IMG/VR virus record: IMGVR_UViG_3300031933_000215 | Coordinates: 1 to 64,000 of that record | Length of the DNA: 64,000 bases | Direction: 5' to 3' (one strand) | Shown here: positions 4,494 to 57,153 of the stretch, piece after piece | How the letters are laid out: every line of letters begins with the position of its first letter | Position numbering within the stretch: position 1 is the stretch's first letter | Notes under the pieces: model-generated | Told to the model about the DNA's origin: nothing | Seen by the model: the letters and a program-made list of their open reading frames with translations, nothing else | Database searches by the model: none | Program-made: the position numbers and the translations under genes

Positions 4494-4745
4494 ATGTCCG
4501 CTGATGTGATGATCATGATCGACGCCATGGTTCTTGAAGACCTGCTACTGACTCGCCATATTGACCGCTCGGCTCGCGCGGGTAAAACAAAGATACCTTC
4601 CCACGAAGAACAGTTGAAGGAGTACACTCGTACCCATTACGAGAACCTCGCTGAACTGCGCAAGATCGGAGGGGAGGAAGCCATTGATTTGTTGGTGACT
4701 TGTCTGCGGGAAAAGAAAACCACCGGTGATTTACTGGCCGCCTAA
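4494..4745 (+). CDS. Small hypothetical protein
   Basis: GGGAG RBS before ATG 4494; followed by a terminator. Confidence 0.6.
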   Translation: MSADVMIMIDAMVLEDLLLTRHIDRSARAGKTKIPSHEEQLKEYTRTHYENLAELRKIGGEEAIDLLVTCLREKKTTGDLLAA

Positions 4746-45585: not shown

Positions 45586-47241
45586 ATGTACGGTTTAAAC
45601 GTTAATATCTCGATCGCGGATTTTATTCTGACGCAGACCGGGACCTACCAGGAGCAGAACCTCCGGCCGTTCACCACCAACATCCAAGCCGAGGCGATCA
45701 ACGCGCTGGAGCGTTCGACCCGTGGTGGTCGCAACCTGGGCGTGTCCGCTGTGGAGGAAGTTGCTGGCAGTGTAATCCGGCCCTCCGCCACGCCGGAGGC
45801 CAACGTCAACATTCAGCAAGGCTGGGCGTCCCGCCGGTTCCGGTTTCTGATGCGGGTGGTGGAAGAACATCCGTTCAACGCCGGTCAGCGGGTGCAGCGC
45901 ATCCTGTTCGGCTACACGGACCATTCGGACGCCTCCATCAACCACCTGGACCCGGAAATGCGGGTGTACTTCAACTCCGAAACGGTGATTGCCGATCACA
46001 TTCGCAACACTCCCAATGGTCCGGTGTCCGAGCCGATCGTGCTGGCGGCAAACCAGATCATCTCCCCACTGGACATGTTCGGTCCGGCGTCGAACTTCTC
46101 GGCGTACTACCAGAGCCCGTCCTCGTACCTGATCCGTCCGGAAGACGTGTTCGGTATGGGTCAGACTCGCAGTGTGACGGAAAAACTGATGCAGTCCGGT
46201 CAGTTTGAAGGCGGTATTGATCTGGTCATGGACTCCCGCAACACGGTGGGTCATGGTGGCACCTATAAGTACTCCCGTCGTCGTGACACCTCGCCGTCCC
46301 GCTACCTCTCAGACACCCTGTCCGCGTACAGTCACGCGGTGAAGGAGTCTCAGATGGAAGAGGAAGGCATCGGTGTGGGTGATCAGGAAGTACTGTACGG
46401 CGAAGCTCAGAGCCACGCCGCGAACCAGGACATCCACAAGAACATGTTCTTCTCCCGTCTGAAAGACGAGGCGCAGTTCATGGAGCGCGGGTACGTGAAG
46501 TTCAAGGACCTACAACAGATGTTCCCGGAAGTTCAGCACACCACGAAGTACTCGTTGGACGATGGTCGCAGCATTCGTCGCGTCAATCAGGCGCAGGATA
46601 GTGAATATTGGACCGGTTCCGACAACATGACGTTGGCCGCGTGTACGCTGGCGCAGGTAGTCCCGTCCATCATGATGGACAACTACATCCGCACCATCAG
46701 CTTCGCGGTAACCAACGGCCATGGCTTGGGCGAATACCTCATTGACTTCCACGAGAATGGCACCACCGGTGTGGTTCCTGGCCTGTCGATGATCGCGCCC
46801 TTGCAGGAGTTCCAGCGTCGTTTGATCACCGACGTGCTGAACACCGTCACCATGAGCAATCAGATCGGCTTCCAGATCAGCATGAGCTCGGATCTGGCCG
46901 GCGACAGTGTCATTGACATTGCCATGGACGGGGAACCCGTGCGTCGTTACGTGGCACCCACGTTCAGTGACTCGCTGTTCGCTCCGGTGATCACCCGTGA
47001 CCGCCAGCGTCCGCAGGACATTTCCAATGACCTGCTGTACTTGGTAGAGCACACAATCCCCAACGCTCGTGAGACGGGCATTGTCGGTGCCCAAGGCCAA
47101 CCGTTCGATCAAGCCTTTGGACATCAGCCGCCCCATCCGGCCAACGGTCCACACCAGGAACCGATGGTAGGCAATGGTTATCCCTCCAACCCGTACAACA
47201 ACCAAGGTTTTAACAATGGCAACGATACAGGACTTTTATAA
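45586..47241 (+). CDS. picA: PicA/Imp1-like phage-nucleus protein import factor (phiKZ gp69-like)
   Basis: 551 aa ORF directly after the gp68-like gene in the conserved block; assignment by synteny. Confidence 0.6.
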   Translation: MYGLNVNISIADFILTQTGTYQEQNLRPFTTNIQAEAINALERSTRGGRNLGVSAVEEVAGSVIRPSATPEANVNIQQGWASRRFRFLMRVVEEHPFNAGQRVQRILFGYTDHSDASINHLDPEMRVYFNSETVIADHIRNTPNGPVSEPIVLAANQIISPLDMFGPASNFSAYYQSPSSYLIRPEDVFGMGQTRSVTEKLMQSGQFEGGIDLVMDSRNTVGHGGTYKYSRRRDTSPSRYLSDTLSAYSHAVKESQMEEEGIGVGDQEVLYGEAQSHAANQDIHKNMFFSRLKDEAQFMERGYVKFKDLQQMFPEVQHTTKYSLDDGRSIRRVNQAQDSEYWTGSDNMTLAACTLAQVVPSIMMDNYIRTISFAVTNGHGLGEYLIDFHENGTTGVVPGLSMIAPLQEFQRRLITDVLNTVTMSNQIGFQISMSSDLAGDSVIDIAMDGEPVRRYVAPTFSDSLFAPVITRDRQRPQDISNDLLYLVEHTIPNARETGIVGAQGQPFDQAFGHQPPHPANGPHQEPMVGNGYPSNPYNNQGFNNGNDTGLL

Positions 47242-48559
47242 GAAATCCCTGAGCGCTCTGCGTTTCCAGGTGGACGACGATGACCTCATCAGCTTCCTGA
47301 ACCCGGAAGGTCGCGCTACCCCGACAGTCGTGGATGGCCGTCGGTTGGTACTGCCGACCAAGCAGCGACTCCGGGAAGGCTTCGGTGAGGACCTCCAACC
47401 GTTCCATCCGCTGTCTGAGAACATCGCGCGGCGCAGTGCGTCGCCGGTGATCAAGAACATGCAGCGGACGGCCAAAGCGGTGCTGGCCCATTACTTCACC
47501 GAGCTGTCACTGCGACTGCTTGCGGTGGCCTCCGACCCGAGTCTGCACAAGGACCTCCCACCGGCGTGCAGTGAGTACTTGAAGAAAGTGTCCAATGCGG
47601 ATGCGAAAACCCTCAAGGACTTCGACACGCTGATTGGTAAGGCCGTGCAGAAGAACAAGCTAATCACGCTGTACCTGCGCAATGGCGGTACCGTGGATGG
47701 GAAGAAGATGAATCGCCTGTGTGTGATTCGCTTCCCAATCATGGACGAGCTTAACGAGGAAAAGCCCTTCGGCATCAAGCTGCGTAAGAAAGACCGCGCG
47801 ACGCTGCAGGCGCTCTTCCATCACATCATGCCATTCGGCGACAGCCCAGAGGAATACAGCGCCGGGTCCAACTCGCGGATCGCGCCGTTCTTCGACGCGT
47901 TCATGCGAGCGTATGCGAAAGTGGCTGAGCAGCTGAACAGCGTGGTACGTAAGTACGCCAAGCCGATGGAGATCTCTCTGGAGCCCATCGACCTGAGCTA
48001 CCTCGAAGAGCTGGACAATCTCGGTCAGTACTACGAGAAGATTCCAAGCCTGCGGGGTAACGATGGCGGTACGAAGGAAGACACGCCCGAAGAAGCCGAG
48101 GCCACCAAGGCACCCACGGAAAAGCCGATCAAATCGGAAACCGTACAAGCACGGACGCCTGGGAAATCCACCCCCCTACCTCCGGCTGAAAAACCAAGCA
48201 GCGGGATGTCGGTGGACGACTTCATGAAGACCATCAACCCGCAGCAGGCACAGCCTGCCCAACCGCAGAACCCGTACCAAGCGGCACCACCACCCAACCC
48301 GTACGCAACCCCCGGTCCGGTAGCGCCTTACGGCCAACCGAACCAACCCATGGGTGGTTACGGCGGCTACGGTGGTGGTTACGGCGGTGGTGGCTACGGC
48401 GACCCCAGGCGTCCAGGCTGGCTGACTGGTGGTCAACCCAACCAACCTTCCCAACCAGTTAACCCGTTCGCGCAAGCGCTCGCTGGTGGTGCTCAGGCAC
48501 AGCCGTCTGGTTATGGGAATCAACCCTACCCCCCAATGGGTGGCGGTAGCAGTCTGTAA
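47216..48559 (+). CDS. phiKZ gp70-like core protein with long Pro/Gln/Gly/Tyr low-complexity C-terminus
   Basis: Overlaps the picA stop; tail with GYGGYGGGYGGGGYG. Confidence 0.7.
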   Translation: MATIQDFYKKSLSALRFQVDDDDLISFLNPEGRATPTVVDGRRLVLPTKQRLREGFGEDLQPFHPLSENIARRSASPVIKNMQRTAKAVLAHYFTELSLRLLAVASDPSLHKDLPPACSEYLKKVSNADAKTLKDFDTLIGKAVQKNKLITLYLRNGGTVDGKKMNRLCVIRFPIMDELNEEKPFGIKLRKKDRATLQALFHHIMPFGDSPEEYSAGSNSRIAPFFDAFMRAYAKVAEQLNSVVRKYAKPMEISLEPIDLSYLEELDNLGQYYEKIPSLRGNDGGTKEDTPEEAEATKAPTEKPIKSETVQARTPGKSTPLPPAEKPSSGMSVDDFMKTINPQQAQPAQPQNPYQAAPPPNPYATPGPVAPYGQPNQPMGGYGGYGGGYGGGGYGDPRRPGWLTGGQPNQPSQPVNPFAQALAGGAQAQPSGYGNQPYPPMGGGSSL

Positions 48560-49060: not shown

Positions 49061-50239
49061 ATGACCGAACGAAACCGTAAAGAGATTGGGGTGGATATGC
49101 TTGGCGTGAACGCCATGGACCCCTACTTCCAAAATTCATCAGGTCCCCGGAAGGCAATGTTCTCCACCCAGATCGGTCAGGCCCCGATCGTGGATGGTAA
49201 TACCCCACGCCGGATCTTCACTGGCGTGGAAACCAAATACGCCGACGACACGTTTGATGTGTCACTACCTTGCCACGCAACCATTTTGAAAGTCATTCAC
49301 AAGTTCCCTATCGGCATGGGTCGGGACGTCATTCGGCATAACCCCACCACCGTGGTGATCTACGAAGATTACTACGACCCACATAAGACCATTGGGGTGT
49401 TGGAAGTCAACGATTTCATGTCACTACACCAGGACTTCGGGTTCCGCATGGAGAAAGATCCGGAAGTGTGGAACGAACTGGGTCCGCGTGTGATGATGGA
49501 GAAAGGGACGCGTCTGGCCAAATCCCCAGCGGTCCGTGAGAACGGTCAGTATGGGATTGGATTGGAAGCAGAAGTGGCGTTCATGTCCATGCCTGGTACC
49601 ATCGAGGATGGGTTCGTGGTGTCCCGGACGTTCCTGGAACGGATGACGCCCCGAACCTACAACACGGCCGTAGGTAATTGGGGGCGGAAAGCGTTCCCGT
49701 TGAACCTTTATGGAGACGACGAGCACTATAAGCCGTTCCCGGACATTGGCGATACCATCCGGGACGACGGATTAGTGTTTGCTCTGCGGGAGATCGATGA
49801 CGATCTTGGCGTGGCAGAGATGACCCCGCGTGCCCTGCGGGAAGTGGACTACGCGTTCGACAAACCATTCTTCGGGAAACCCGGGGCCAAGATCGTGGAT
49901 GTCAATGTCTACCACGATGACCGACTGAACCCGTCCAGTACGCCGGTCGGTATGGACACCCAAGCTCGGAAGTACTACGACGCTCAGGTGGTGTTCTACC
50001 AATCACTGATGGACGAGTATAATCGCTTGGCTAAACGGCGCGGTAAGCGTCTGTGCATCACTCCCGAGTTTAACCGTTTGTTGGTGGAAGCTCAGATGTT
50101 CCTGCCAGTGGCAGGGGACCGCCGTAAGCTGACCCGGATGTACCGTCTGGAGCAACTTGACGAATGGCGTGTGGAGGTGACCTACGAGAAACGCTTGGAA
50201 TCCAACATGGGTTACAAGTTCACTGACATGCATGGTGGT
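49061..50239 (+). CDS. Non-virion RNAP beta subunit C-terminal part, exon 1 (phiKZ gp71-73-like)
   Basis: RKAMFSTQIGQ, VAFMSMPGTIEDGFVVS; ends at GYKFTDMHGG, the first half of the GDKxxxRHGNKG motif. Confidence 0.9.
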
Positions 50240-51584
50240 AATTAATTTGTGAGGGTTCATCTATCTCCAGCAATATTAGGAGGTAAGATGAAAAAGAGTA
50301 AAGAGTTTAGACGCATTCCCGGATATGATCAATACGCTGTCAGTAAAGACGGTGTGGTGAAGTCCGTGGTTAGAGATATTGTACTCAGCCAATACCTTTT
50401 AGATGGGTATTTGATTGTAGACACGTTCCGTGGATCAAAAACGGAAACCCTACCTGTCCATAGAGCCGTTGCGTTGGCATGGGTTGAAAACCCAAACCCT
50501 GAGAAGTTTACAGTGGTCAACCACAAAGACGGCGATCGGACAAACAATTGGTACGAGAACCTTGAGTGGACTGACTACTCAGGGAACAACTACCACGCCA
50601 TTAATAGTGGTCTGCGCAACGACAACATTCCTTGTCGCATCCGGGATTTCGAAACCGGCGAGATAACGGAATTCAGTTCTATGGCACAGGCAGCAGTGGC
50701 GATGGGTTTACGGGCATGTGAACCGTACAGTATCTTAAGACCAAAGATGTTCGGGAAGTTAGTTGCCGATAAATACGAGCTTCGGTTTAAAGACGAACCA
50801 ACACCCTGGTTCTACGAAAATCGAACCGAGCGAGTTAAGCCTTCACGTTACATGGTTATTGTAACGGAAGAGGACGGTAGCAGTCGGGAAATCTTCTCGA
50901 CGCGTGCTCTCCTTAAAGAGTATCAACTCTACGACAGCCCAATGAAATCAATCCCGGAGCTGGCGAAGTTTGGGAATCAGAAATACCCAAACAAAGAGTT
51001 CAAGGTACTTGACAGTTACTCCGGGGATCTTTACCGGGTTACGCGTCAAACCAAAGAGAGCCGTAAGCTACCTGTCCTGGCACGTAATCCAGATGGGGAT
51101 ATGCATTTCGACTCTTTGACTCAATGTGCCAAACACTTCGGTGTTGATCGTTCCGTCATTCACAATCGACTTGATAAGCAAATAGATTTGGATGGATGGA
51201 CCTTCACAAGAAATATTGCCCCTTCAGTCCTTGATGGCTGAAGGAGTCTCCTTTAACTGACGGGAACGCCCTGAGAGCCTCATACACCAACTACATCGGT
51301 GGAAACACATGTAGGGCCAGTCTAATCAGCTGGACGGTAAAAGAGATGAGGATTGGGTGATCCGCAGCCAAGCTCCTACGGATCGCTGTGAAGCGAGCTA
51401 CGGAGAAGGTTCAACGACTAACCGTTCACCACGGTGTACCCGCCAAGCGGCGTCGGCTAATTACCGGTTAATAGGGAAATGGGGAGCCTCTCATTGAGGG
51501 GAAGATATAGTCTGGTCCTTGGGGAAACTCAAGGCGGGTGTCATTGCACACCGGGTACAAGTAGCGATTGTACTGGACAAAACG
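50240..51584 (+). mobile_element. Group I self-splicing intron in the nvRNAP beta gene
   Basis: Exon ends in U and intron ends in G; core elements GTGATCCGCAGCC (Q-like), GGTTCAACGACTA (R), GAAGATATAGTCT (S); splicing restores in-frame MHGG|KGVVC. Confidence 0.88.
50288..51241 (+). CDS. Intron-encoded HNH homing endonuclease (NUMOD4 + HNH_3 + C-terminal DNA-binding repeats)
   Basis: RRIPGYDQYAVSKDGVVKS; VHRAVALAW...VNHKDGDRTNNWYENLEW; GGAGG RBS. Confidence 0.9.
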   Translation: MKKSKEFRRIPGYDQYAVSKDGVVKSVVRDIVLSQYLLDGYLIVDTFRGSKTETLPVHRAVALAWVENPNPEKFTVVNHKDGDRTNNWYENLEWTDYSGNNYHAINSGLRNDNIPCRIRDFETGEITEFSSMAQAAVAMGLRACEPYSILRPKMFGKLVADKYELRFKDEPTPWFYENRTERVKPSRYMVIVTEEDGSSREIFSTRALLKEYQLYDSPMKSIPELAKFGNQKYPNKEFKVLDSYSGDLYRVTRQTKESRKLPVLARNPDGDMHFDSLTQCAKHFGVDRSVIHNRLDKQIDLDGWTFTRNIAPSVLDG

Positions 51585-52565: not shown

Positions 52566-54536
52566 ATGAACCGTTACAACGCGCGTGATCTGTTGGCCCT
52601 CACCGTTGACGAGTTGTGGTCGCTCCCAGAGGAGCGCCACATCATCGTCTTTGACGATGGGGAACTGACAACACATACCCGGGCAACCATCACCTCGGTG
52701 TACCTCTGGTACATCATCCAACAATACCCCGACACTCCGATCTTGAAGGAGTTCCATCTGGGGGGCCAAACCTTCAGCAGTAAGCTGATGGTCGGGTTGA
52801 TCAACAAAGTGATCTGGACGGTCCATGATCACCATCAAGTGGACCCGGAGGTCTTGGCCAAATGGGCATTCGATACCACCAACCGTTTCTACAACGACTT
52901 CACCGTCCGCTTGGCGGCCCACGTCTCCAGCATGAGCATGTTCGACGTACTGGAGATCATGTATCACCCAGAGGTGCAGAAAGCCAACAAGGAAGTGGAG
53001 CCCACTCAAGCGTCCATCGAGGAGGAATGCTACCCCCGTTTGAAGAAGGTGTTGACCGAGGCGCCGGAATTGAACGGCAACCCGATGGCGGATGCCTGTC
53101 GATCGGGCACCGCTTCAGCCGGTCAGGTGTTACAGTGCGTGGGCCCTCGTGGGTTCATGACCGACATCAACTCGGACATCTTCCCCGAACCGATCATGAC
53201 CGGGTACATCGAGGGCATCAATGGGCTGTACGAGTCCACGATCGAATCCCGTTCCGGCTCGAAGTCACTGCTGTACAACAAGGAGCTGCTGCGGTCCACG
53301 GAATACTTCAACCGGAAGACCCAGTTGATTGCGGAGTACGTTCGCAACCTGCACCCTGGCGATTGCGGTACACCGCACGTTCGGGATTTCCCGGTCATGC
53401 ACGACAACCTCAAATCCCTGGAAGGGAAGTACCACGTGGTGGATGGGAAGCTGGAAGTCCTGCGTGGTGATGAGGAACACCTGTGCGGAAAACACATCAA
53501 GCTTCGTTCGGTTTTCGGGTGCATTCATCCCGACCCGGCGGGCGTGTGCTTGACATGTTATGGCGAGCTGGGTCTGGCCATTCCGTACGGCACCAACGTC
53601 GGGCAGGTCAGTGCGGTGTCCATGGGGGACAAGATCACCTCCAGCGTACTGTCGACCAAGCACTTGGATTCCACATCCCGTGTGGAGAAGTTCCACCTGG
53701 AAGGGGTTGAGGCCAAGTATTTGGAGTACGGCAAAGAACCGGAGATGCTCTACCTCAAGAAGAAACATCGGAACAAGTCGATCCGTTTGGTGGTGGCACG
53801 CCAGGAAGCCCCGAACTTGGCGGACGTTTTGATGCTGAATGATCTGGATAATTACCCGGTCGCCAACGCCAGTCAGATTACGATGATGCAATTCATCGTG
53901 GATGAAGGTGACGAGGGTCAAACGCAGGACGTCCTTCGGGTCTCCCTGTACAACCGTCGTTCCAGCTTCTCCAAAGAGTTGCTGCGCCACATCTCCAAGA
54001 CGCGATGGACCCACGACAGTCGGGACAACATCGTGATCGATCTGACCGGTTTCGACCTTACCCAACCACTGCTTTCACTGCCGTTCAAGCACGTTAACAT
54101 GCACGAGGTCATGAAGCGCATTCAGAGCTTCCTGCATTCGTCCAGCGACAGTGAGAACAAGAAACTGAAGGTGTCTACACGTGACGTATCCCGAAACAAA
54201 CTCAAGTTCCTGAAAAACTACAAGGACCCGACAGAGGCCTTGGTCAGCTTCACGGCCATGTTGAATGAAAAGCTCAACATCAACATTGTGCATTGTGAGA
54301 TCCTGCTGTACGCCATGATGGTTCGGTCCTCAGCGCAGCGCGATTATCGACTCCCCATCCCGGGATTCGATGGCTCGTTTGAGAACTACAACAACCTCAT
54401 GATGAACCGCAGTCTCAGTGCTGCCATGGCTTACGAGAAACAAAGCGCCCCGCTGGTCTCTCCTTCCAGTTTCGTCTACACTGATAGGAATGACCACCCG
54501 TACGATCTGATCGTGTTGGGAGGGCGTGTGAGCTAA
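52566..54536 (+). CDS. Non-virion RNAP beta' subunit, C-terminal part (phiKZ gp74-like)
   Basis: SGTASAGQVLQCVGPRG, DCGT, SVFGC...GVCLTCYG, GTNVGQVSAVSMGDKITSSVLSTKH. Confidence 0.9.
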   Translation: MNRYNARDLLALTVDELWSLPEERHIIVFDDGELTTHTRATITSVYLWYIIQQYPDTPILKEFHLGGQTFSSKLMVGLINKVIWTVHDHHQVDPEVLAKWAFDTTNRFYNDFTVRLAAHVSSMSMFDVLEIMYHPEVQKANKEVEPTQASIEEECYPRLKKVLTEAPELNGNPMADACRSGTASAGQVLQCVGPRGFMTDINSDIFPEPIMTGYIEGINGLYESTIESRSGSKSLLYNKELLRSTEYFNRKTQLIAEYVRNLHPGDCGTPHVRDFPVMHDNLKSLEGKYHVVDGKLEVLRGDEEHLCGKHIKLRSVFGCIHPDPAGVCLTCYGELGLAIPYGTNVGQVSAVSMGDKITSSVLSTKHLDSTSRVEKFHLEGVEAKYLEYGKEPEMLYLKKKHRNKSIRLVVARQEAPNLADVLMLNDLDNYPVANASQITMMQFIVDEGDEGQTQDVLRVSLYNRRSSFSKELLRHISKTRWTHDSRDNIVIDLTGFDLTQPLLSLPFKHVNMHEVMKRIQSFLHSSSDSENKKLKVSTRDVSRNKLKFLKNYKDPTEALVSFTAMLNEKLNINIVHCEILLYAMMVRSSAQRDYRLPIPGFDGSFENYNNLMMNRSLSAAMAYEKQSAPLVSPSSFVYTDRNDHPYDLIVLGGRVS

Positions 54537-54585
54537 CCACGGAGGACGGGGGAGGGTGACAGCTCCCCCGTTGTTGTACCCAACA

Positions 54586-57153
54586 ATGAAATCATTACTG
54601 ACGCTCGACGTTTATTCTCACGGGGTCCGCATCAGTGGATACACCCGTGAGACCTTTCGTATCATTGCTGTTTTTTTGGAACGACTGGCGCTAAAAGAAC
54701 CACGCCACATTCCACAGGAACGGCGAATGGTCATGGAACTGAAGAAACGGTTCTACGGCCTAACCGATTCCCGCAAGGAATCTTTCATCCACCGCTACCA
54801 GCTTGAAGAGTTTCTGCTCTACTTGAAAGACCGTGGATTGGAAGGGCGATTTGAGATCAACCATATCGACGCCCCGGTACCCACCCCAGCCACGTTTGAT
54901 ATTTACGATCACTATGAAACCCGTGGATACCAGATTCCCATCGTTGAGTTCATGACCACCCCCGATAAGCGCTCTTGCCGCCTGGACCTCCAGACCGGCA
55001 AGGGGAAGGCCGAGACACTCTATTCTCGAATTAAAGTGCCTGGTGGTTGGTCTACAATGGGTGAGATGGAGGTTGGTACGAAAGTCACAGCATGGGATGG
55101 AACCACCACCCATGTAACGGGAGTATACCCACAGGGAACCACTCCCGTTTATAGGGTAACGTTTTGGGACGGACGTCATGTTGATGTTTGTCCTGAGCAT
55201 CTCTGGAAAGCGTTCTATGTGAACACTGTACCCCATAGACGGTGGCGGGTTATTGATACCTTGGAACTCAAAAGACTAAGTGAAATGCCCAATCCACGGG
55301 TATATGTTCCTTTGTGTCAATCCGAAGACGGCCCTGAGGTTGATGTCACAATACCGCCATACACACTGGGCGTACTTATTGGAGACGGTAACCTAACCGG
55401 AACCGGTATAAATATATTCAAACCAGATAACGAGCTGTTCGAAAATATTAGGGAGGAATTATTACCGGGTCACGAGTTACGCGACTCTCTAAAGAAGCCG
55501 GGTTTACGTTCCTTGGTAAATGCCAACGGAGGTGAAAACCTATACCGTCGCTACCTCAAAGAAATGGACATTGACGGAACCTATTCTTGGGAAAAATACA
55601 TTCCCCAGAATTACCTCCACGGATCTACGGAACAACGGTGGGCATTACTACAGGGATTGATGGACACAGACGGGACAGTCAACACCAGAGAAACCGGTGG
55701 GGCTGTGTCGTTTAACTCCACCAGTCGTCGTTTGGCGGGGCAAGTTCAATACCTTGTGCGTTCTCTTGGCGGTATTGCCTCAATCAGTGAACGCAATACA
55801 CAATACACATACAACGGAGAAAAATGTCAGGGACGTAAGTCTTACGATGTTAACATCCGTCACCCGAAACAACGAAAACTATTCCGCCTACCACGGAAGT
55901 TAGAACGTATACCTGAAACTAACCAATATTCGGAGGATTTAAAACTCAGAGTTCGTTCGGTTGAATACCTTGGTGAGGAACCAACTCAATGCATTTCAAT
56001 CGATCATCCGGAGCGCCTGTATGTAACCAATGACTTCATTGTGACACACAACACCTATTGCGCCTTACGGTCGGTGGCCACCCTGGGCGTTCGGACGGTG
56101 GTGATGGTGTCGCCCAAATACTTCGGCATTTGGGAAAAAGCCCTGAAAGAAACCTACAAAGACATAGATGGACGTTACTGTACGGTTTCCGGTTCCGCCG
56201 AGTTGCGGGCGTTGATTGAGAAGGGCGTGGAAGGAGACCTGGACTACGATGTGATCATTGTCTCCAACGTAACCTACCGCAGCTACCTGGAATCGTACGA
56301 GCGGTTCGGTGAGGCGATCACCAGCATCGGCTATTTGGTCCCGCCCCCACGGTTTCATGAAGCCTTGGGCGCTGGGGTGCAAATCAACGATGAGTTCCAA
56401 GACGACCCCGGTCTGGTGTTCCGCACGGATGTTTACACGAATGTCAGAAAACAGTTGTACTTGTCCGCCACGCCATTCACTGGGAACGAGTTCGTCACCC
56501 GCATGATCGACGTGATGCTCCCCAAAGAGACGTCCTGTCCCTTGCCGGAATACGACCAGTACATCAATGTGATCGGACTGATGTACCACGACCCGGACGT
56601 TAAACGCAAAGACTACCTGACGCCCTTTAAGAACACCTACAATCACACCCGGTACGAGAAACGCCTGCTCAAAGCCAAGCGTCGATTGGAACGGTACAAG
56701 CGGATGGTGTTCAAGGTCATCAACGGCATTTACATCAAAGACCGGGAACCGGGCCAGAAGCTACTGGTTCTGTGCGCCACGGTGGACTTCATCAAACACC
56801 TGACCAAGGAGTTGAAGCTGAAGTACCCCGACTTGACCATCGGTGAGTTCGTGGCGGGGTCCAACCCCAAGACGCTGCAAACCAACGACATCACGGTGTC
56901 GACCATCAAGTCGGCCGGGACCGGTCAAGACATCATTGACTTAAGAGAAGTACTGCTGCTGCAAGCAACGGATTCCAAGAAGGACAACATCCAAATCCTG
57001 GGCCGTCTGAGACGCATGAAAAACTGGCCAGAACACACACCACGCATGACGTATATGGTGTGTATGGACATCCCACAGCAGATTCGTTACTTCAAAAATA
57101 AGAAGGGTCATTTCGATGGACGCGTCGTGTCCCATCGGGTGATGCGTATCTAG
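54586..57153 (+). CDS. SF2 (UvsW-like) helicase precursor containing an intein (phiKZ gp75-like)
   Basis: Walker A LQTGKGK|T split by the intein; QINDEF, LYLSATP, SAGTGQDI, QILGRLRR motifs. Confidence 0.88.
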   Translation: MKSLLTLDVYSHGVRISGYTRETFRIIAVFLERLALKEPRHIPQERRMVMELKKRFYGLTDSRKESFIHRYQLEEFLLYLKDRGLEGRFEINHIDAPVPTPATFDIYDHYETRGYQIPIVEFMTTPDKRSCRLDLQTGKGKAETLYSRIKVPGGWSTMGEMEVGTKVTAWDGTTTHVTGVYPQGTTPVYRVTFWDGRHVDVCPEHLWKAFYVNTVPHRRWRVIDTLELKRLSEMPNPRVYVPLCQSEDGPEVDVTIPPYTLGVLIGDGNLTGTGINIFKPDNELFENIREELLPGHELRDSLKKPGLRSLVNANGGENLYRRYLKEMDIDGTYSWEKYIPQNYLHGSTEQRWALLQGLMDTDGTVNTRETGGAVSFNSTSRRLAGQVQYLVRSLGGIASISERNTQYTYNGEKCQGRKSYDVNIRHPKQRKLFRLPRKLERIPETNQYSEDLKLRVRSVEYLGEEPTQCISIDHPERLYVTNDFIVTHNTYCALRSVATLGVRTVVMVSPKYFGIWEKALKETYKDIDGRYCTVSGSAELRALIEKGVEGDLDYDVIIVSNVTYRSYLESYERFGEAITSIGYLVPPPRFHEALGAGVQINDEFQDDPGLVFRTDVYTNVRKQLYLSATPFTGNEFVTRMIDVMLPKETSCPLPEYDQYINVIGLMYHDPDVKRKDYLTPFKNTYNHTRYEKRLLKAKRRLERYKRMVFKVINGIYIKDREPGQKLLVLCATVDFIKHLTKELKLKYPDLTIGEFVAGSNPKTLQTNDITVSTIKSAGTGQDIIDLREVLLLQATDSKKDNIQILGRLRRMKNWPEHTPRMTYMVCMDIPQQIRYFKNKKGHFDGRVVSHRVMRI
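55009..56052 (+). mobile_element. Class 3 intein (348 aa) with LAGLIDADG endonuclease
   Basis: Starts with Ala (AETLYSRIK), ends in THN before Thr; WCT triad in EHLW, TQCISI and VTHN; LGVLIGDG and LQGLMDTDG motifs; lower GC than flanks. Confidence 0.9.

What the first reader, a model, noticed from the sequence alone, without database searches (positions are those of the whole stretch)
50240..51584. Group I intron with HNH endonuclease inserted in the HGG|KG catalytic-region motif of nvRNAP beta
Boundaries can be read directly: ...CAT GGT GGT | AATTAA ... ACAAAACG | AAA GGC GTC. Splicing restores MHGGKGVVC. The endonuclease ORF sits near the intron 5' end, ahead of the ribozyme core. Intron HNH enzymes in RNAP genes of nucleus-forming phages (PhiPA3 gp210) are known to cut the intronless allele of co-infecting relatives, so this is a candidate interference weapon aimed at nvRNAP beta. 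An intron in the equivalent phiKZ gene is recalled, so the site may not be new.
Basis: partly seen in the sequence, partly recalled or inferred. Interest (0 to 1): 0.6.

Follow-up and report, generated by a model that had tools for sequence, protein, structure and literature searches.

The report
Mobile intron splitting phage polymerase gene
A self-splicing group I intron carrying its own HNH homing endonuclease interrupts the catalytic-centre motif of a jumbo phage's non-virion RNA polymerase beta gene, at exactly the site already occupied in phage phiKZ, so it is real but a new member of a known kind.

Summary
Window 50240..51584 (1345 nt) is a group I intron (Rfam RF00028, 69.7 bits, E 1.3e-15). 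It splits the gene for the C-terminal half of the non-virion RNA polymerase beta subunit. Exon 1 matches residues 1-393 and exon 2 residues 394-699 of the solved phiKZ gp71-73 chain, so the join is seamless. The first exon-2 residue is the lysine that aligns with E. coli beta K1073. The intron ORF (50288..51241, 317 aa) is an I-HmuI-type HNH endonuclease, 58% identical to phiKZ gp72. phiKZ, PhiPA3 and several metagenomic chimalliviruses carry related introns at the identical site, some with this endonuclease, some with a different HNH protein, some with none. Twelve such introns share a covarying core (42 of 58 predicted pairs compensated). The guide sequence changes from GCC to GUU where the exon ends AAU instead of GGU. 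The ORF always sits in the P1 loop. Endonuclease identities (54-61%) do not track host-gene identities (35-52%), and its GC3 is 49% against 68-70% in the exons, which suggests horizontal spread. Splicing, DNA cleavage and any role in phage competition were not tested here. Verdict: an orthologue of the phiKZ gp72 intron in an uncultured phage.

The parts
49061..50239 (+). Exon 1 of the nvRNAP beta (C-terminal half) gene, 393 codons, ending ...MHGG
   Evidence: It matches phrog_3295 positions 5-403 (E 1e-130) and PDB 7OGP chain C residues 1-393 (E 3e-134). It is 52-58% identical to phiKZ gp71 and PhiPA3 gene 065.
50240..51584 (+). Group I intron, 1345 nt. Read unspliced, exon 1 runs into an in-frame TAA at 50243..50245.
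   Evidence: Boundaries. The 5' exon ends in U, the intron ends in G51584. Rfam RF00028 hit.
50237..50242 (+). P1 5' strand (GGU|AAU) containing the 5' splice site after U50239
   Evidence: It pairs 6/6 with AUUGCC at 51215..51220 with a G.U wobble at the splice site. The pairing covaries in homologues.
50246..50266 (+). 5' strand of a 21-bp extension of P1
   Evidence: RNAduplex pairs it with 51190..51210. An equivalent helix with compensatory changes is found by the same duplex fold in phiKZ, L011 and L012; by eye in L037.
50278..50283 (+). Shine-Dalgarno AGGAGG for the endonuclease ORF
   Evidence: Read directly; it lies 4 nt upstream of ATG 50288.
50288..51241 (+). HNH homing endonuclease ORF (317 aa) in the P1 loop. 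Its last ~50 nt encode the P1 3' strand, the guide sequence and most of P2.
   Evidence: phrog_59 HNH endonuclease E 2e-36. Sub-threshold Pfam hits to HNH_3, NUMOD1, NUMOD4 and I-HmuI NUMOD-like. I-HmuI PDB 1U3E E 7e-12, with H79/N91/N100 aligned to H75/N87/N96. 58% identical to phiKZ gp72.
51190..51210 (+). 3' strand of the P1 extension. It lies inside the ORF and encodes the conserved LDGWTF C-terminal motif.
51215..51220 (+). Internal guide sequence AUUGCC (G51218 pairs with U50239)
   Evidence: GCC becomes GUU in L037 and L089, where the exon ends AAU.
51221..51244 (+). P2 hairpin (51221-27 / 51238-44); the ORF stop TGA 51239..51241 lies in its 3' strand
   Evidence: every pair covaries among 12 introns.
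51248..51512 (+). Catalytic core: P3 (51248-53/51481-86), P4 (51257-63/51362-67), P5 with a P5a-c extension (51267-71/51355-59), P6 (51368-76/51402-09), P7 (51416-20/51508-12), P7.1 (51421-24/51432-35), P7.2 (51440-43/51447-50), P8 (51487-91/51497-501)
   Evidence: Rfam alignment, helix table, RNAalifold on 12 homologues. P4 and P6 coordinates were corrected by hand after the script misplaced them. P7 and the J8/7 motif AAGAUAUAGUC are invariant.
51517..51584 (+). 3' domain: P9 (51517-23/51528-34, GAAA loop), P9.1 (51537-41/51548-52), P9.2 (51555-60/51568-73), terminal G51584
51585..52541 (+). Exon 2, 318 codons plus stop, starting KGVVC; K1 aligns with phiKZ gp71-73 K394 and E. coli beta K1073
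   Evidence: phrog_3295 positions 404-694. PDB 7OGP chain C 394-699 (E 2.5e-103) and E. coli beta 1073-1130. Pfam RNA_pol_Rpb2_6.

Best explanation
This is a mobile group I intron that carries an I-HmuI-type HNH homing endonuclease, and it is orthologous to the phiKZ gp71/gp72/gp73 intron. It sits in the gene for the C-terminal half of the beta-like subunit of a nucleus-forming jumbo phage's non-virion RNA polymerase.

Inferred mechanism, step 1 (splicing). The gene is transcribed as one pre-mRNA. The intron folds so that the last three exon bases plus the first three intron bases (GGU|AAU) pair with the guide sequence AUUGCC about 975 nt downstream. A 21-bp helix stabilises this pairing and loops out the endonuclease ORF. 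An external guanosine attacks after U50239, and the exons are ligated after G51584. The result is a 711-residue subunit with the intact ...HGGKG... motif of the double-psi beta-barrel. Unspliced RNA would give only a 394-residue truncated product, because of the TAA two codons into the intron.

Step 2 (endonuclease). The ORF is translated from its own Shine-Dalgarno sequence. By analogy with I-HmuI and PhiPA3 gp210, the protein nicks or cuts intron-less alleles of the same gene at or near the GGTGGT|AAAGG junction. Repair from the intron-containing copy then spreads the intron (homing).

What is shown here: the boundaries, the frame restoration, the family assignments, the covarying structure, the shared insertion site, and the mismatch between endonuclease and host-gene divergence. 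What is inferred: self-splicing, the DNA target, and homing.
For: Ribozyme: Rfam RF00028 at 69.7 bits, E 1.3e-15. Exon continuity: the two exons match abutting positions of one PHROG profile and of the solved phiKZ gp71-73 chain. Same site and same intron termini in phiKZ, and gp72 is 58% identical. PhiPA3, PA7 and many other Phikzvirus genomes carry endonuclease-less introns at the same site. Further occupied alleles occur in IMG/VR and metagenome contigs, with Rfam scores of 60-92 bits. RNAalifold on 12 introns gives 58 pairs, 42 of them with compensatory changes. P1 and the guide sequence covary, including GCC to GUU where the exon ends AAU. The HNH residues are conserved relative to I-HmuI. 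In phiKZ, native nvRNAP contains a single 74-kDa gp71-73 polypeptide (PMC4666361) that is continuous across the junction in the cryo-EM chain (PMC8287921). Mobility signals: endonuclease identities of 54-61% do not track host-gene identities of 35-52%, and endonuclease GC3 is 0.49 against 0.68-0.70 in the exons. Close relatives of intron carriers are intron-less (PS119XW is 74-79% identical to PhiPA3).
Against: A long-read transcriptome of phiKZ found no spliced reads for the predicted introns, including the gp72 one (bioRxiv 10.1101/2023.10.13.562163), although protein data imply that splicing occurs. P10 pairing with the 3' exon is at most 2 bp (hand inspection). All individual Pfam hits on the endonuclease are below their gathering scores. 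The endonuclease's target and activity are unknown.
Confidence: 0.88

Rival explanations
1. Besides being a homing element, the endonuclease acts as an interference weapon. During co-infection it is imported into a related phage's nucleus, cuts that phage's intron-less nvRNAP beta gene, and so blocks its middle and late transcription, as PhiPA3 gp210 does to phiKZ gp178.
For: There is a precedent in the same phage family for an intron HNH enzyme in an RNAP gene (PMC11620839). The target would be an essential, highly conserved motif. Intron-less alleles with near-identical junction DNA exist in related phages (GGTGGT|AAAGG in Noxifer, L008). The ORF is intact with its catalytic residues.
Against: The precedent concerns a different gene (virion RNAP) and an endonuclease from a different intron. 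phiKZ orf72 deletion mutants were readily isolated, so the gene is not strictly essential. PhiPA3 and most Phikzvirus genomes already carry an endonuclease-less intron at this site, which destroys the target, so no competitor with an open site is documented. No close intron-less relative of this phage was found. Nuclear import cannot be predicted here.
Confidence: 0.25
2. The intron is a resident, no-longer-mobile element. It still splices, but the endonuclease is inactive or has lost its targets and is on the way to deletion, as in the 307-nt and 450-nt endonuclease-less versions.
For: Endonuclease-less derivatives dominate among sequenced Phikzvirus genomes: only 14 phage records keep at least 80% of the ORF. 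PhiPA3 keeps only a remnant of the ORF's 3' end. I-HmuI D74 is N78 here.
Against: The 317-codon ORF is uninterrupted, has a strong Shine-Dalgarno sequence, keeps H79/N91/N100, and is 55-61% identical over its full length to orthologues in four other lineages. That pattern argues for purifying selection or recent transfer.
Confidence: 0.1
3. The gene is truly split: the two halves are made as separate proteins and the insert is never removed from the RNA.
For: GenBank annotates phiKZ gp71 and gp73 as separate CDSs, and PHROGs holds separate families for the halves (phrog_18919, phrog_23982). No spliced reads were seen in one phiKZ data set.
Against: Exon 2 has no ATG or GTG start and no ribosome-binding site at its 5' end. 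Its frame is open for only 22 codons upstream, back to a TTG inside the conserved ribozyme core. The split would fall between adjacent residues of a catalytic-centre motif. The ribozyme core is conserved with covariation. phiKZ nvRNAP contains one 74-kDa gp71-73 chain.
Confidence: 0.03

Closest known systems
phiKZ gp71 / gp72 / gp73 intron (nvRNAP beta-like subunit gp71-73; predicted by Mesyanzhinov et al. 2002, as cited)
   Same: Identical insertion point (CAT GGT GGT | ... | AAR GGC GTC). The intron starts AATTAAT and ends ACG. The HNH ORF has the same length (316 vs 317 aa), is 58% identical and sits in the P1 loop. The guide sequence AUUGCC is the same. The neighbouring genes are syntenic (gp69, gp70, gp74, gp75 homologues).
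   Different: The host gene is only about 52% identical. This intron has a P5a-c extension of about 85 nt and an extra hairpin after P7.2 that phiKZ lacks. Its P1 extension is 21 bp against about 13 bp. It comes from an uncultured phage with 53% GC.
Endonuclease-less introns at the same site in PhiPA3 (450 nt) and most Phikzvirus genomes such as PA7 (307 nt)
   Same: Same site and a homologous core. PhiPA3's core, including P5a-c, is the closest by blastn (65% identity over 91% of the query).
   Different: They have no ORF. PhiPA3 keeps a remnant of the ORF's 3' end, and PA7 keeps only a short P1-extension hairpin.
PhiPA3 gp210 intron (virion RNAP beta gene; Birkholz et al. 2024, PMC11620839)
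   Same: A group I intron with an HNH nicking endonuclease in a catalytic-region motif of a chimallivirus RNAP beta-like gene.
   Different: It is in a different gene (vRNAP gp211/209, homologous to phiKZ gp178) at a different site (after a DD motif). Its interference role was shown by experiment. The window's phage has a separate HNH-containing insert in its own vRNAP beta gene, outside the window. That HNH protein is only 32% identical to this one over 142 aa.
I-HmuI / SPO1 DNA polymerase intron (PDB 1U3E)
   Same: The N-terminal DNA-binding sheet plus HNH domain are homologous (E 7e-12), with catalytic His and Asn conserved. It is phage-borne and encoded in a group I intron.
   Different: I-HmuI is 174 aa, this protein 317 aa, with extra NUMOD-like modules. 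The host gene and target are different.

Membership tests
Group I intron (Rfam RF00028) | Covariance-model score above the curated gathering threshold | tested here: met
   69.7 bits against a cut-off of 50, E 1.3e-15, full model 1-253
Group I intron (Rfam RF00028) | 5' exon ends in U, which forms a G.U wobble with the internal guide sequence in P1 | tested here: met
   U50239 pairs with G51218. The P1 6-mer pairs 6/6, and the guide sequence covaries with the exon and intron bases in 11 homologues.
Group I intron (Rfam RF00028) | Intron ends in G (omega-G) | tested here: met
   G51584; all 17 homologous introns whose 3' ends were read (5, 12) also end in G
Group I intron (Rfam RF00028) | Conserved P3-P8 core supported by compensatory changes | tested here: met
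   42 of 58 RNAalifold pairs show double changes across 12 introns. P2, P3, P6, P7.1, P8, P9, P9.1 and P9.2 are all supported. P7 is invariant, so it says nothing either way.
Group I intron (Rfam RF00028) | Excision restores a continuous reading frame | tested here: met
   each exon searched separately
Group I intron (Rfam RF00028) | Guanosine-dependent self-splicing | not testable with these tools
Subgroup IA (phage-type) group I introns | Extra helices P7.1/P7.2 between P7 and the 3' strand of P3 | tested here: inconclusive
   P7.1 (51421-24/51432-35) is present and covaries. P7.2 is present here, but its register in homologues is unclear. No subgroup-specific models were available.
I-HmuI-like HNH homing endonucleases | HNH catalytic motif (general-base His, metal-binding Asn) | tested here: met
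   H79, N91 and N100 align with I-HmuI H75, N87 and N96. phrog_59 E 2e-36. Pfam HNH_3 at 23.1 bits is just under its 24.8 cut-off.
I-HmuI-like HNH homing endonucleases | Site-specific nicking or cleavage of the intron-less allele | not testable with these tools
   Requires the purified protein
phiKZ gp72-type intron (orthologous element) | Same insertion site, homologous ribozyme and orthologous endonuclease | tested here: met
Intron-endonuclease interference system (PhiPA3 gp210 type) | The endonuclease damages a co-infecting relative's allele and lowers its yield | not tested
   Only the precedent from the literature. No intron-less close relative of this phage was found.

The most novel reading that the evidence does not exclude
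The HG(G/N)|KG codon junction of the nvRNAP beta gene is a family-wide homing hotspot in chimalliviruses. One ribozyme lineage is exchanged horizontally among phages whose polymerase genes are only 35-50% identical, and it has hosted at least two unrelated HNH endonuclease lineages as well as empty forms. The ORF is always placed in the P1 loop, and its last codons encode the 3' strand of P1 and, in the gp72-type ORFs, the guide sequence as well. A ribosome finishing the ORF must therefore unwind the 5' splice-site helix. In a phage that separates transcription (nucleus) from translation (cytoplasm), this would make splicing and endonuclease synthesis sequential rather than competing.
Probability: 0.3. 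Interest if true: 0.5.

Novelty: new member of a known kind. Interest (0 to 1): 0.3.

Why it matters
For annotation, the two 'RNA polymerase' ORFs and the HNH ORF between them should be merged into one spliced gene of 711 codons plus an intron-encoded endonuclease. For biology, the element adds a well-diverged example to the few known RNAP-gene introns of nucleus-forming phages. The comparative set assembled here shows that this site is occupied in many uncultured chimalliviruses, with endonuclease gain, loss and replacement. That is the expected footprint of an active homing cycle, and it is a precondition for the interference-competition idea demonstrated for PhiPA3 gp210. The set also gives a covariation-supported secondary structure for the phiKZ-type intron, which could guide splicing and endonuclease assays. 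None of this changes the current understanding of such elements.

Tried and rejected
- Megablast of the whole gene against 50,697 phage records gave no match, so the phage has no close cultured relative.
- blastn (distant mode) with the ribozyme found only PhiPA3 over most of its length, plus short conserved-core matches elsewhere.
No read-level evidence for or against splicing could be obtained, and read laying was not used.
- The first, strict pattern scan of IMG/VR returned only contigs already known.
- The relaxed pattern on metagenomes returned 120 loci. Nineteen of them encode the polymerase exons or the endonuclease; twelve were taken further and the rest were discarded as chance matches. 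None was taken for human DNA, and none was analysed further.
- My automated helix table mislocated the 3' strands of P4 and P6 and the register of P5, P5b and P7.2 in homologues. I corrected the window coordinates by hand, and I do not rely on those rows for covariation.
- RNAalifold's pairs 5/6-471/472 and the small hairpin in the AAGAUAUAGUC motif are probably artefacts of a method that cannot draw the P3/P7 pseudoknot.
- P10 was looked for by hand: at most 2 bp here and not conserved, so no P10 is claimed.
- The upstream GTG at 50249 (330-aa version of the ORF) was rejected as the start, in favour of ATG 50288. That ATG has the Shine-Dalgarno sequence and matches the N-termini of the orthologues.
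- The exons were never joined for any search or fold.
- The large protein searches, structure prediction and complex prediction were not used, because family scans and PDB matches left nothing open.

Full report
**1. What is in the sequence**

Exon 1 of a '+' strand gene ends CAT GGT GGT at 50239. The next bases, AAT TAA, give an in-frame stop two codons later. At 51584|51585 the sequence reads ...AAAACG | AAA GGC GTC GTC TGT. Removing 50240..51584 (1345 nt) joins ...TDMHGG to KGVVCKI... in frame.

The intron begins AA and exon 2 begins AAA, so shifting both boundaries by 1 or 2 nt would give the same mRNA.

**2. Is it a group I intron?**

Rfam's RF00028 model matches 51163..51534 at 69.7 bits (gathering score 50, E 1.3e-15). 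It is the only Rfam hit in the 64-kb window.

Each exon was searched on its own.
- Exon 1 (393 aa) matches positions 5-403 of the 698-position profile phrog_3295 ('RNA polymerase beta subunit'). Exon 2 (318 aa) matches positions 404-694 of the same profile.
- Against the PDB, exon 1 aligns to residues 1-393 and exon 2 to residues 394-699 of chain C of 7OGP, the phiKZ non-virion RNA polymerase subunit gp71-73.
- Exon 2's first residue aligns with E. coli beta K1073. It corresponds to phiKZ K394, one of the two conserved double-psi beta-barrel lysines named in the structure paper (PMC8287921).

The gene is the nvRNAP one, not the virion one. Supporting this, the next gene (52566..54536) is the gp74-type beta' piece (phrog_3015), the local gene order matches phiKZ gp69-gp75, and the same genome has a separate vRNAP beta gene elsewhere.

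**3. The ORF**

The ORF starts at ATG 50288, 4 nt after AGGAGG (50278..50283), and runs to TGA 51239..51241, giving 317 aa.
- It matches phrog_59 and several other HNH endonuclease families.
- It gives sub-threshold Pfam hits to HNH_3, NUMOD1, NUMOD4 and the I-HmuI NUMOD-like domain.
- It matches the solved nicking homing endonuclease I-HmuI (1U3E, E 7e-12). H79, N91 and N100 align with I-HmuI H75, N87 and N96.

**4. The site is not new**

- phiKZ has gp71, gp72 (316-aa HNH protein) and gp73 in the same arrangement. Its exon/intron junctions are CAT GGT GGT | AATTAAT... and ...AACG | AAG GGC GTC. gp72 is 58% identical to the window's ORF (E 9e-131).
- PhiPA3 has a 450-nt intron at the same point without an ORF. 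It still carries a remnant of the ORF's 3' end.
- PA7, fnug, kmuB, SL2, PA02 and other Phikzvirus genomes have a 307-nt ORF-less version.
- Only 14 phage records keep at least 80% of the ORF.
- I took an evenly spread sample of 60 of the 304 phage records that encode this subunit. Only Phikzvirus genomes were split at this site. 201phi2-1, Psa21, PS119XW, Noxifer, Goslar, SPN3US, EL and the Erwinia, Ralstonia, Serratia, Vibrio and Aeromonas phages were continuous.

Literature on the phiKZ element:
- The phiKZ introns at gp56, gp72 and gp179 were predicted in 2002 (cited).
- Native phiKZ nvRNAP contains one 74-kDa gp71-73 polypeptide (PMC4666361).
- orf72 can be deleted (PMC12676376).
- One long-read transcriptome did not see spliced reads.

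**5. Uncultured relatives**

- The window's genome is an IMG/VR record of 231,818 bp with terminal repeats. A second IMG/VR record carries an identical copy of the locus.
- Two other IMG/VR phages (L011, L012) carry orthologous endonucleases (55-61% identity) at the same site, although their polymerase exons are only 37-44% identical to the window's.
- A pattern scan of metagenome contigs, filtered by tblastn, added further occupied alleles:
  - L037, L089 and L070: introns of about 1.85 kb with a different 445-465-aa HNH ORF, about 31-33% identical in the N-terminal region.
  - L087, L048 and L130: ORF-less introns of 324-408 nt.
  - L143: a gp72-type ORF, 58% identical.
  - Several contigs cut at one end.
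- Eight of these reach 60-91 bits on RF00028.
- In L037 and L089 the motif is HGN|KG, as in E. coli.

**6. Structure**

*P1 and the P1 extension.*
- RNAduplex pairs the 5' splice-site region with a segment about 950 nt downstream. GGU|AAU (50237..50242) pairs with AUUGCC (51215..51220), and U50239 forms the canonical G.U wobble with G51218.
- A 21-bp helix (50246..50266 with 51190..51210) extends P1 and loops out the ORF.
- The duplex fold recovers the same arrangement in phiKZ, L011 and L012, with compensatory changes in both the 6-mer and the extension. In L037 the extension is visible by eye, and in L070 only the guide 6-mer was checked.
- The guide triplet is GCC where the exon ends GGU, and GUU where it ends AAU.
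- ORF-less introns have a short hairpin in place of the ORF. The ORF is therefore in the P1 loop.
- In the gp72-type introns the ORF reads through the P1 3' strand, the guide sequence and into P2; here the stop lies in the 3' strand of P2. In the other HNH type the ORF ends 1-3 nt before the guide sequence.

*Core.* MAFFT plus RNAalifold on 12 introns gave 58 pairs, 42 of them with double compensatory changes. These cover P2, P3, P6, P7.1, P8, P9, P9.1 and P9.2. P7 and J8/7 are invariant.

*Features of this intron.* The window's intron, like PhiPA3, L012 and others, has a P5a-c extension that phiKZ lacks. The P7.1/P7.2 helices suggest the phage-typical IA class, but no subgroup models were available. 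P10 is at most 2 bp.

**7. Signs of mobility**

- Pairwise endonuclease identities among the window, phiKZ, L011 and L012 are all 54-61%. The polymerase exons of the same genomes range from 35% to 52%. The window's endonuclease is closest to that of L012, one of its two most distant host genes.
- The endonuclease has GC 46.5% and GC3 49%, against 55% and 68-70% in the flanking exons.
- Occupied and empty alleles are interleaved among related phages: PhiPA3 is occupied, while PS119XW, 74-79% identical, is empty.
- Together with ORF-less and ORF-replaced forms, this is the pattern expected from repeated invasion, degeneration and re-invasion. With so few sequences I did not attempt a formal topology test.

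**8. Mechanism and rivals**

- *Best-supported account.* This is a self-splicing, mobile group I intron whose I-HmuI-like enzyme targets intron-less alleles. Splicing, the cleavage site and homing are inferred from family membership and from the phiKZ protein data.
- *Interference weapon.* The idea is plausible by analogy with PhiPA3 gp210. That enzyme, however, sits in the vRNAP gene, and no susceptible competitor of this phage is known. I give it about 0.25.
- *Truly split gene.* This is very unlikely. Exon 2 has no start codon or ribosome-binding site, and its frame is open upstream only to a TTG inside the conserved core.

**9. Verdict**

It is an orthologue of a known element, in a new and rather divergent uncultured chimallivirus. 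The added value is comparative: a wider distribution of the site, endonuclease turnover, and the P1-loop architecture with ORF/guide-sequence overlap.

Noticed in passing
window 54556..57153, insert at about 55012..56052: The gp75-type SF2 helicase gene downstream of the polymerase genes carries a roughly 347-aa intein-like insert with a LAGLIDADG homing endonuclease domain (Pfam LAGLIDADG_3 E 6e-11, Hom_end E 3e-6). It splits the Walker A motif (GKGK | T). The Noxifer orthologue (514 aa) aligns to residues 4-152 and 500-865 with nothing in between. The insert ends ...THN followed by T, but appears to begin with Ala rather than Cys or Ser.
   Followed up: partly
own genome outside the window, G000:C1 about 194300..197400 (L006), minus strand: A second HNH-containing insert splits the virion RNAP beta gene. 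phrog_3148 positions 880-1055 and 1065-1423 flank a 363-aa HNH ORF. A sub-threshold RF00028 hit (25.8 bits) lies at 195526..195897. This is the counterpart of the PhiPA3 gp210 type of element.
   Followed up: partly
L037, L089, L070 (metagenome contigs), same insertion site: The same ribozyme lineage at the same polymerase site carries a different, larger HNH ORF (445-465 aa, about 31-33% identical over part of its length). In L037 and L089 the exon motif is HGN|KG and the guide sequence is GUU. This indicates endonuclease replacement within a resident intron.
   Followed up: partly
window 47174..48559: The phiKZ gp70-position protein (461 aa) ends in a low-complexity tail of about 150 aa, rich in Pro, Gln, Gly and Tyr (GGYGGYGGGYGGGGYG and PNQP repeats). 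It looks like a disordered region.
   Followed up: no
L004 (PS119XW), around locus position 4664: The intron-less PS119XW allele reads CAT GGC GGC | AAA GGT at the site, where all occupied alleles have GGT GGT or GGT AAT followed by AAR GG. The synonymous C at the last exon position could not form the P1 G.U pair and might affect endonuclease recognition.
   Followed up: no
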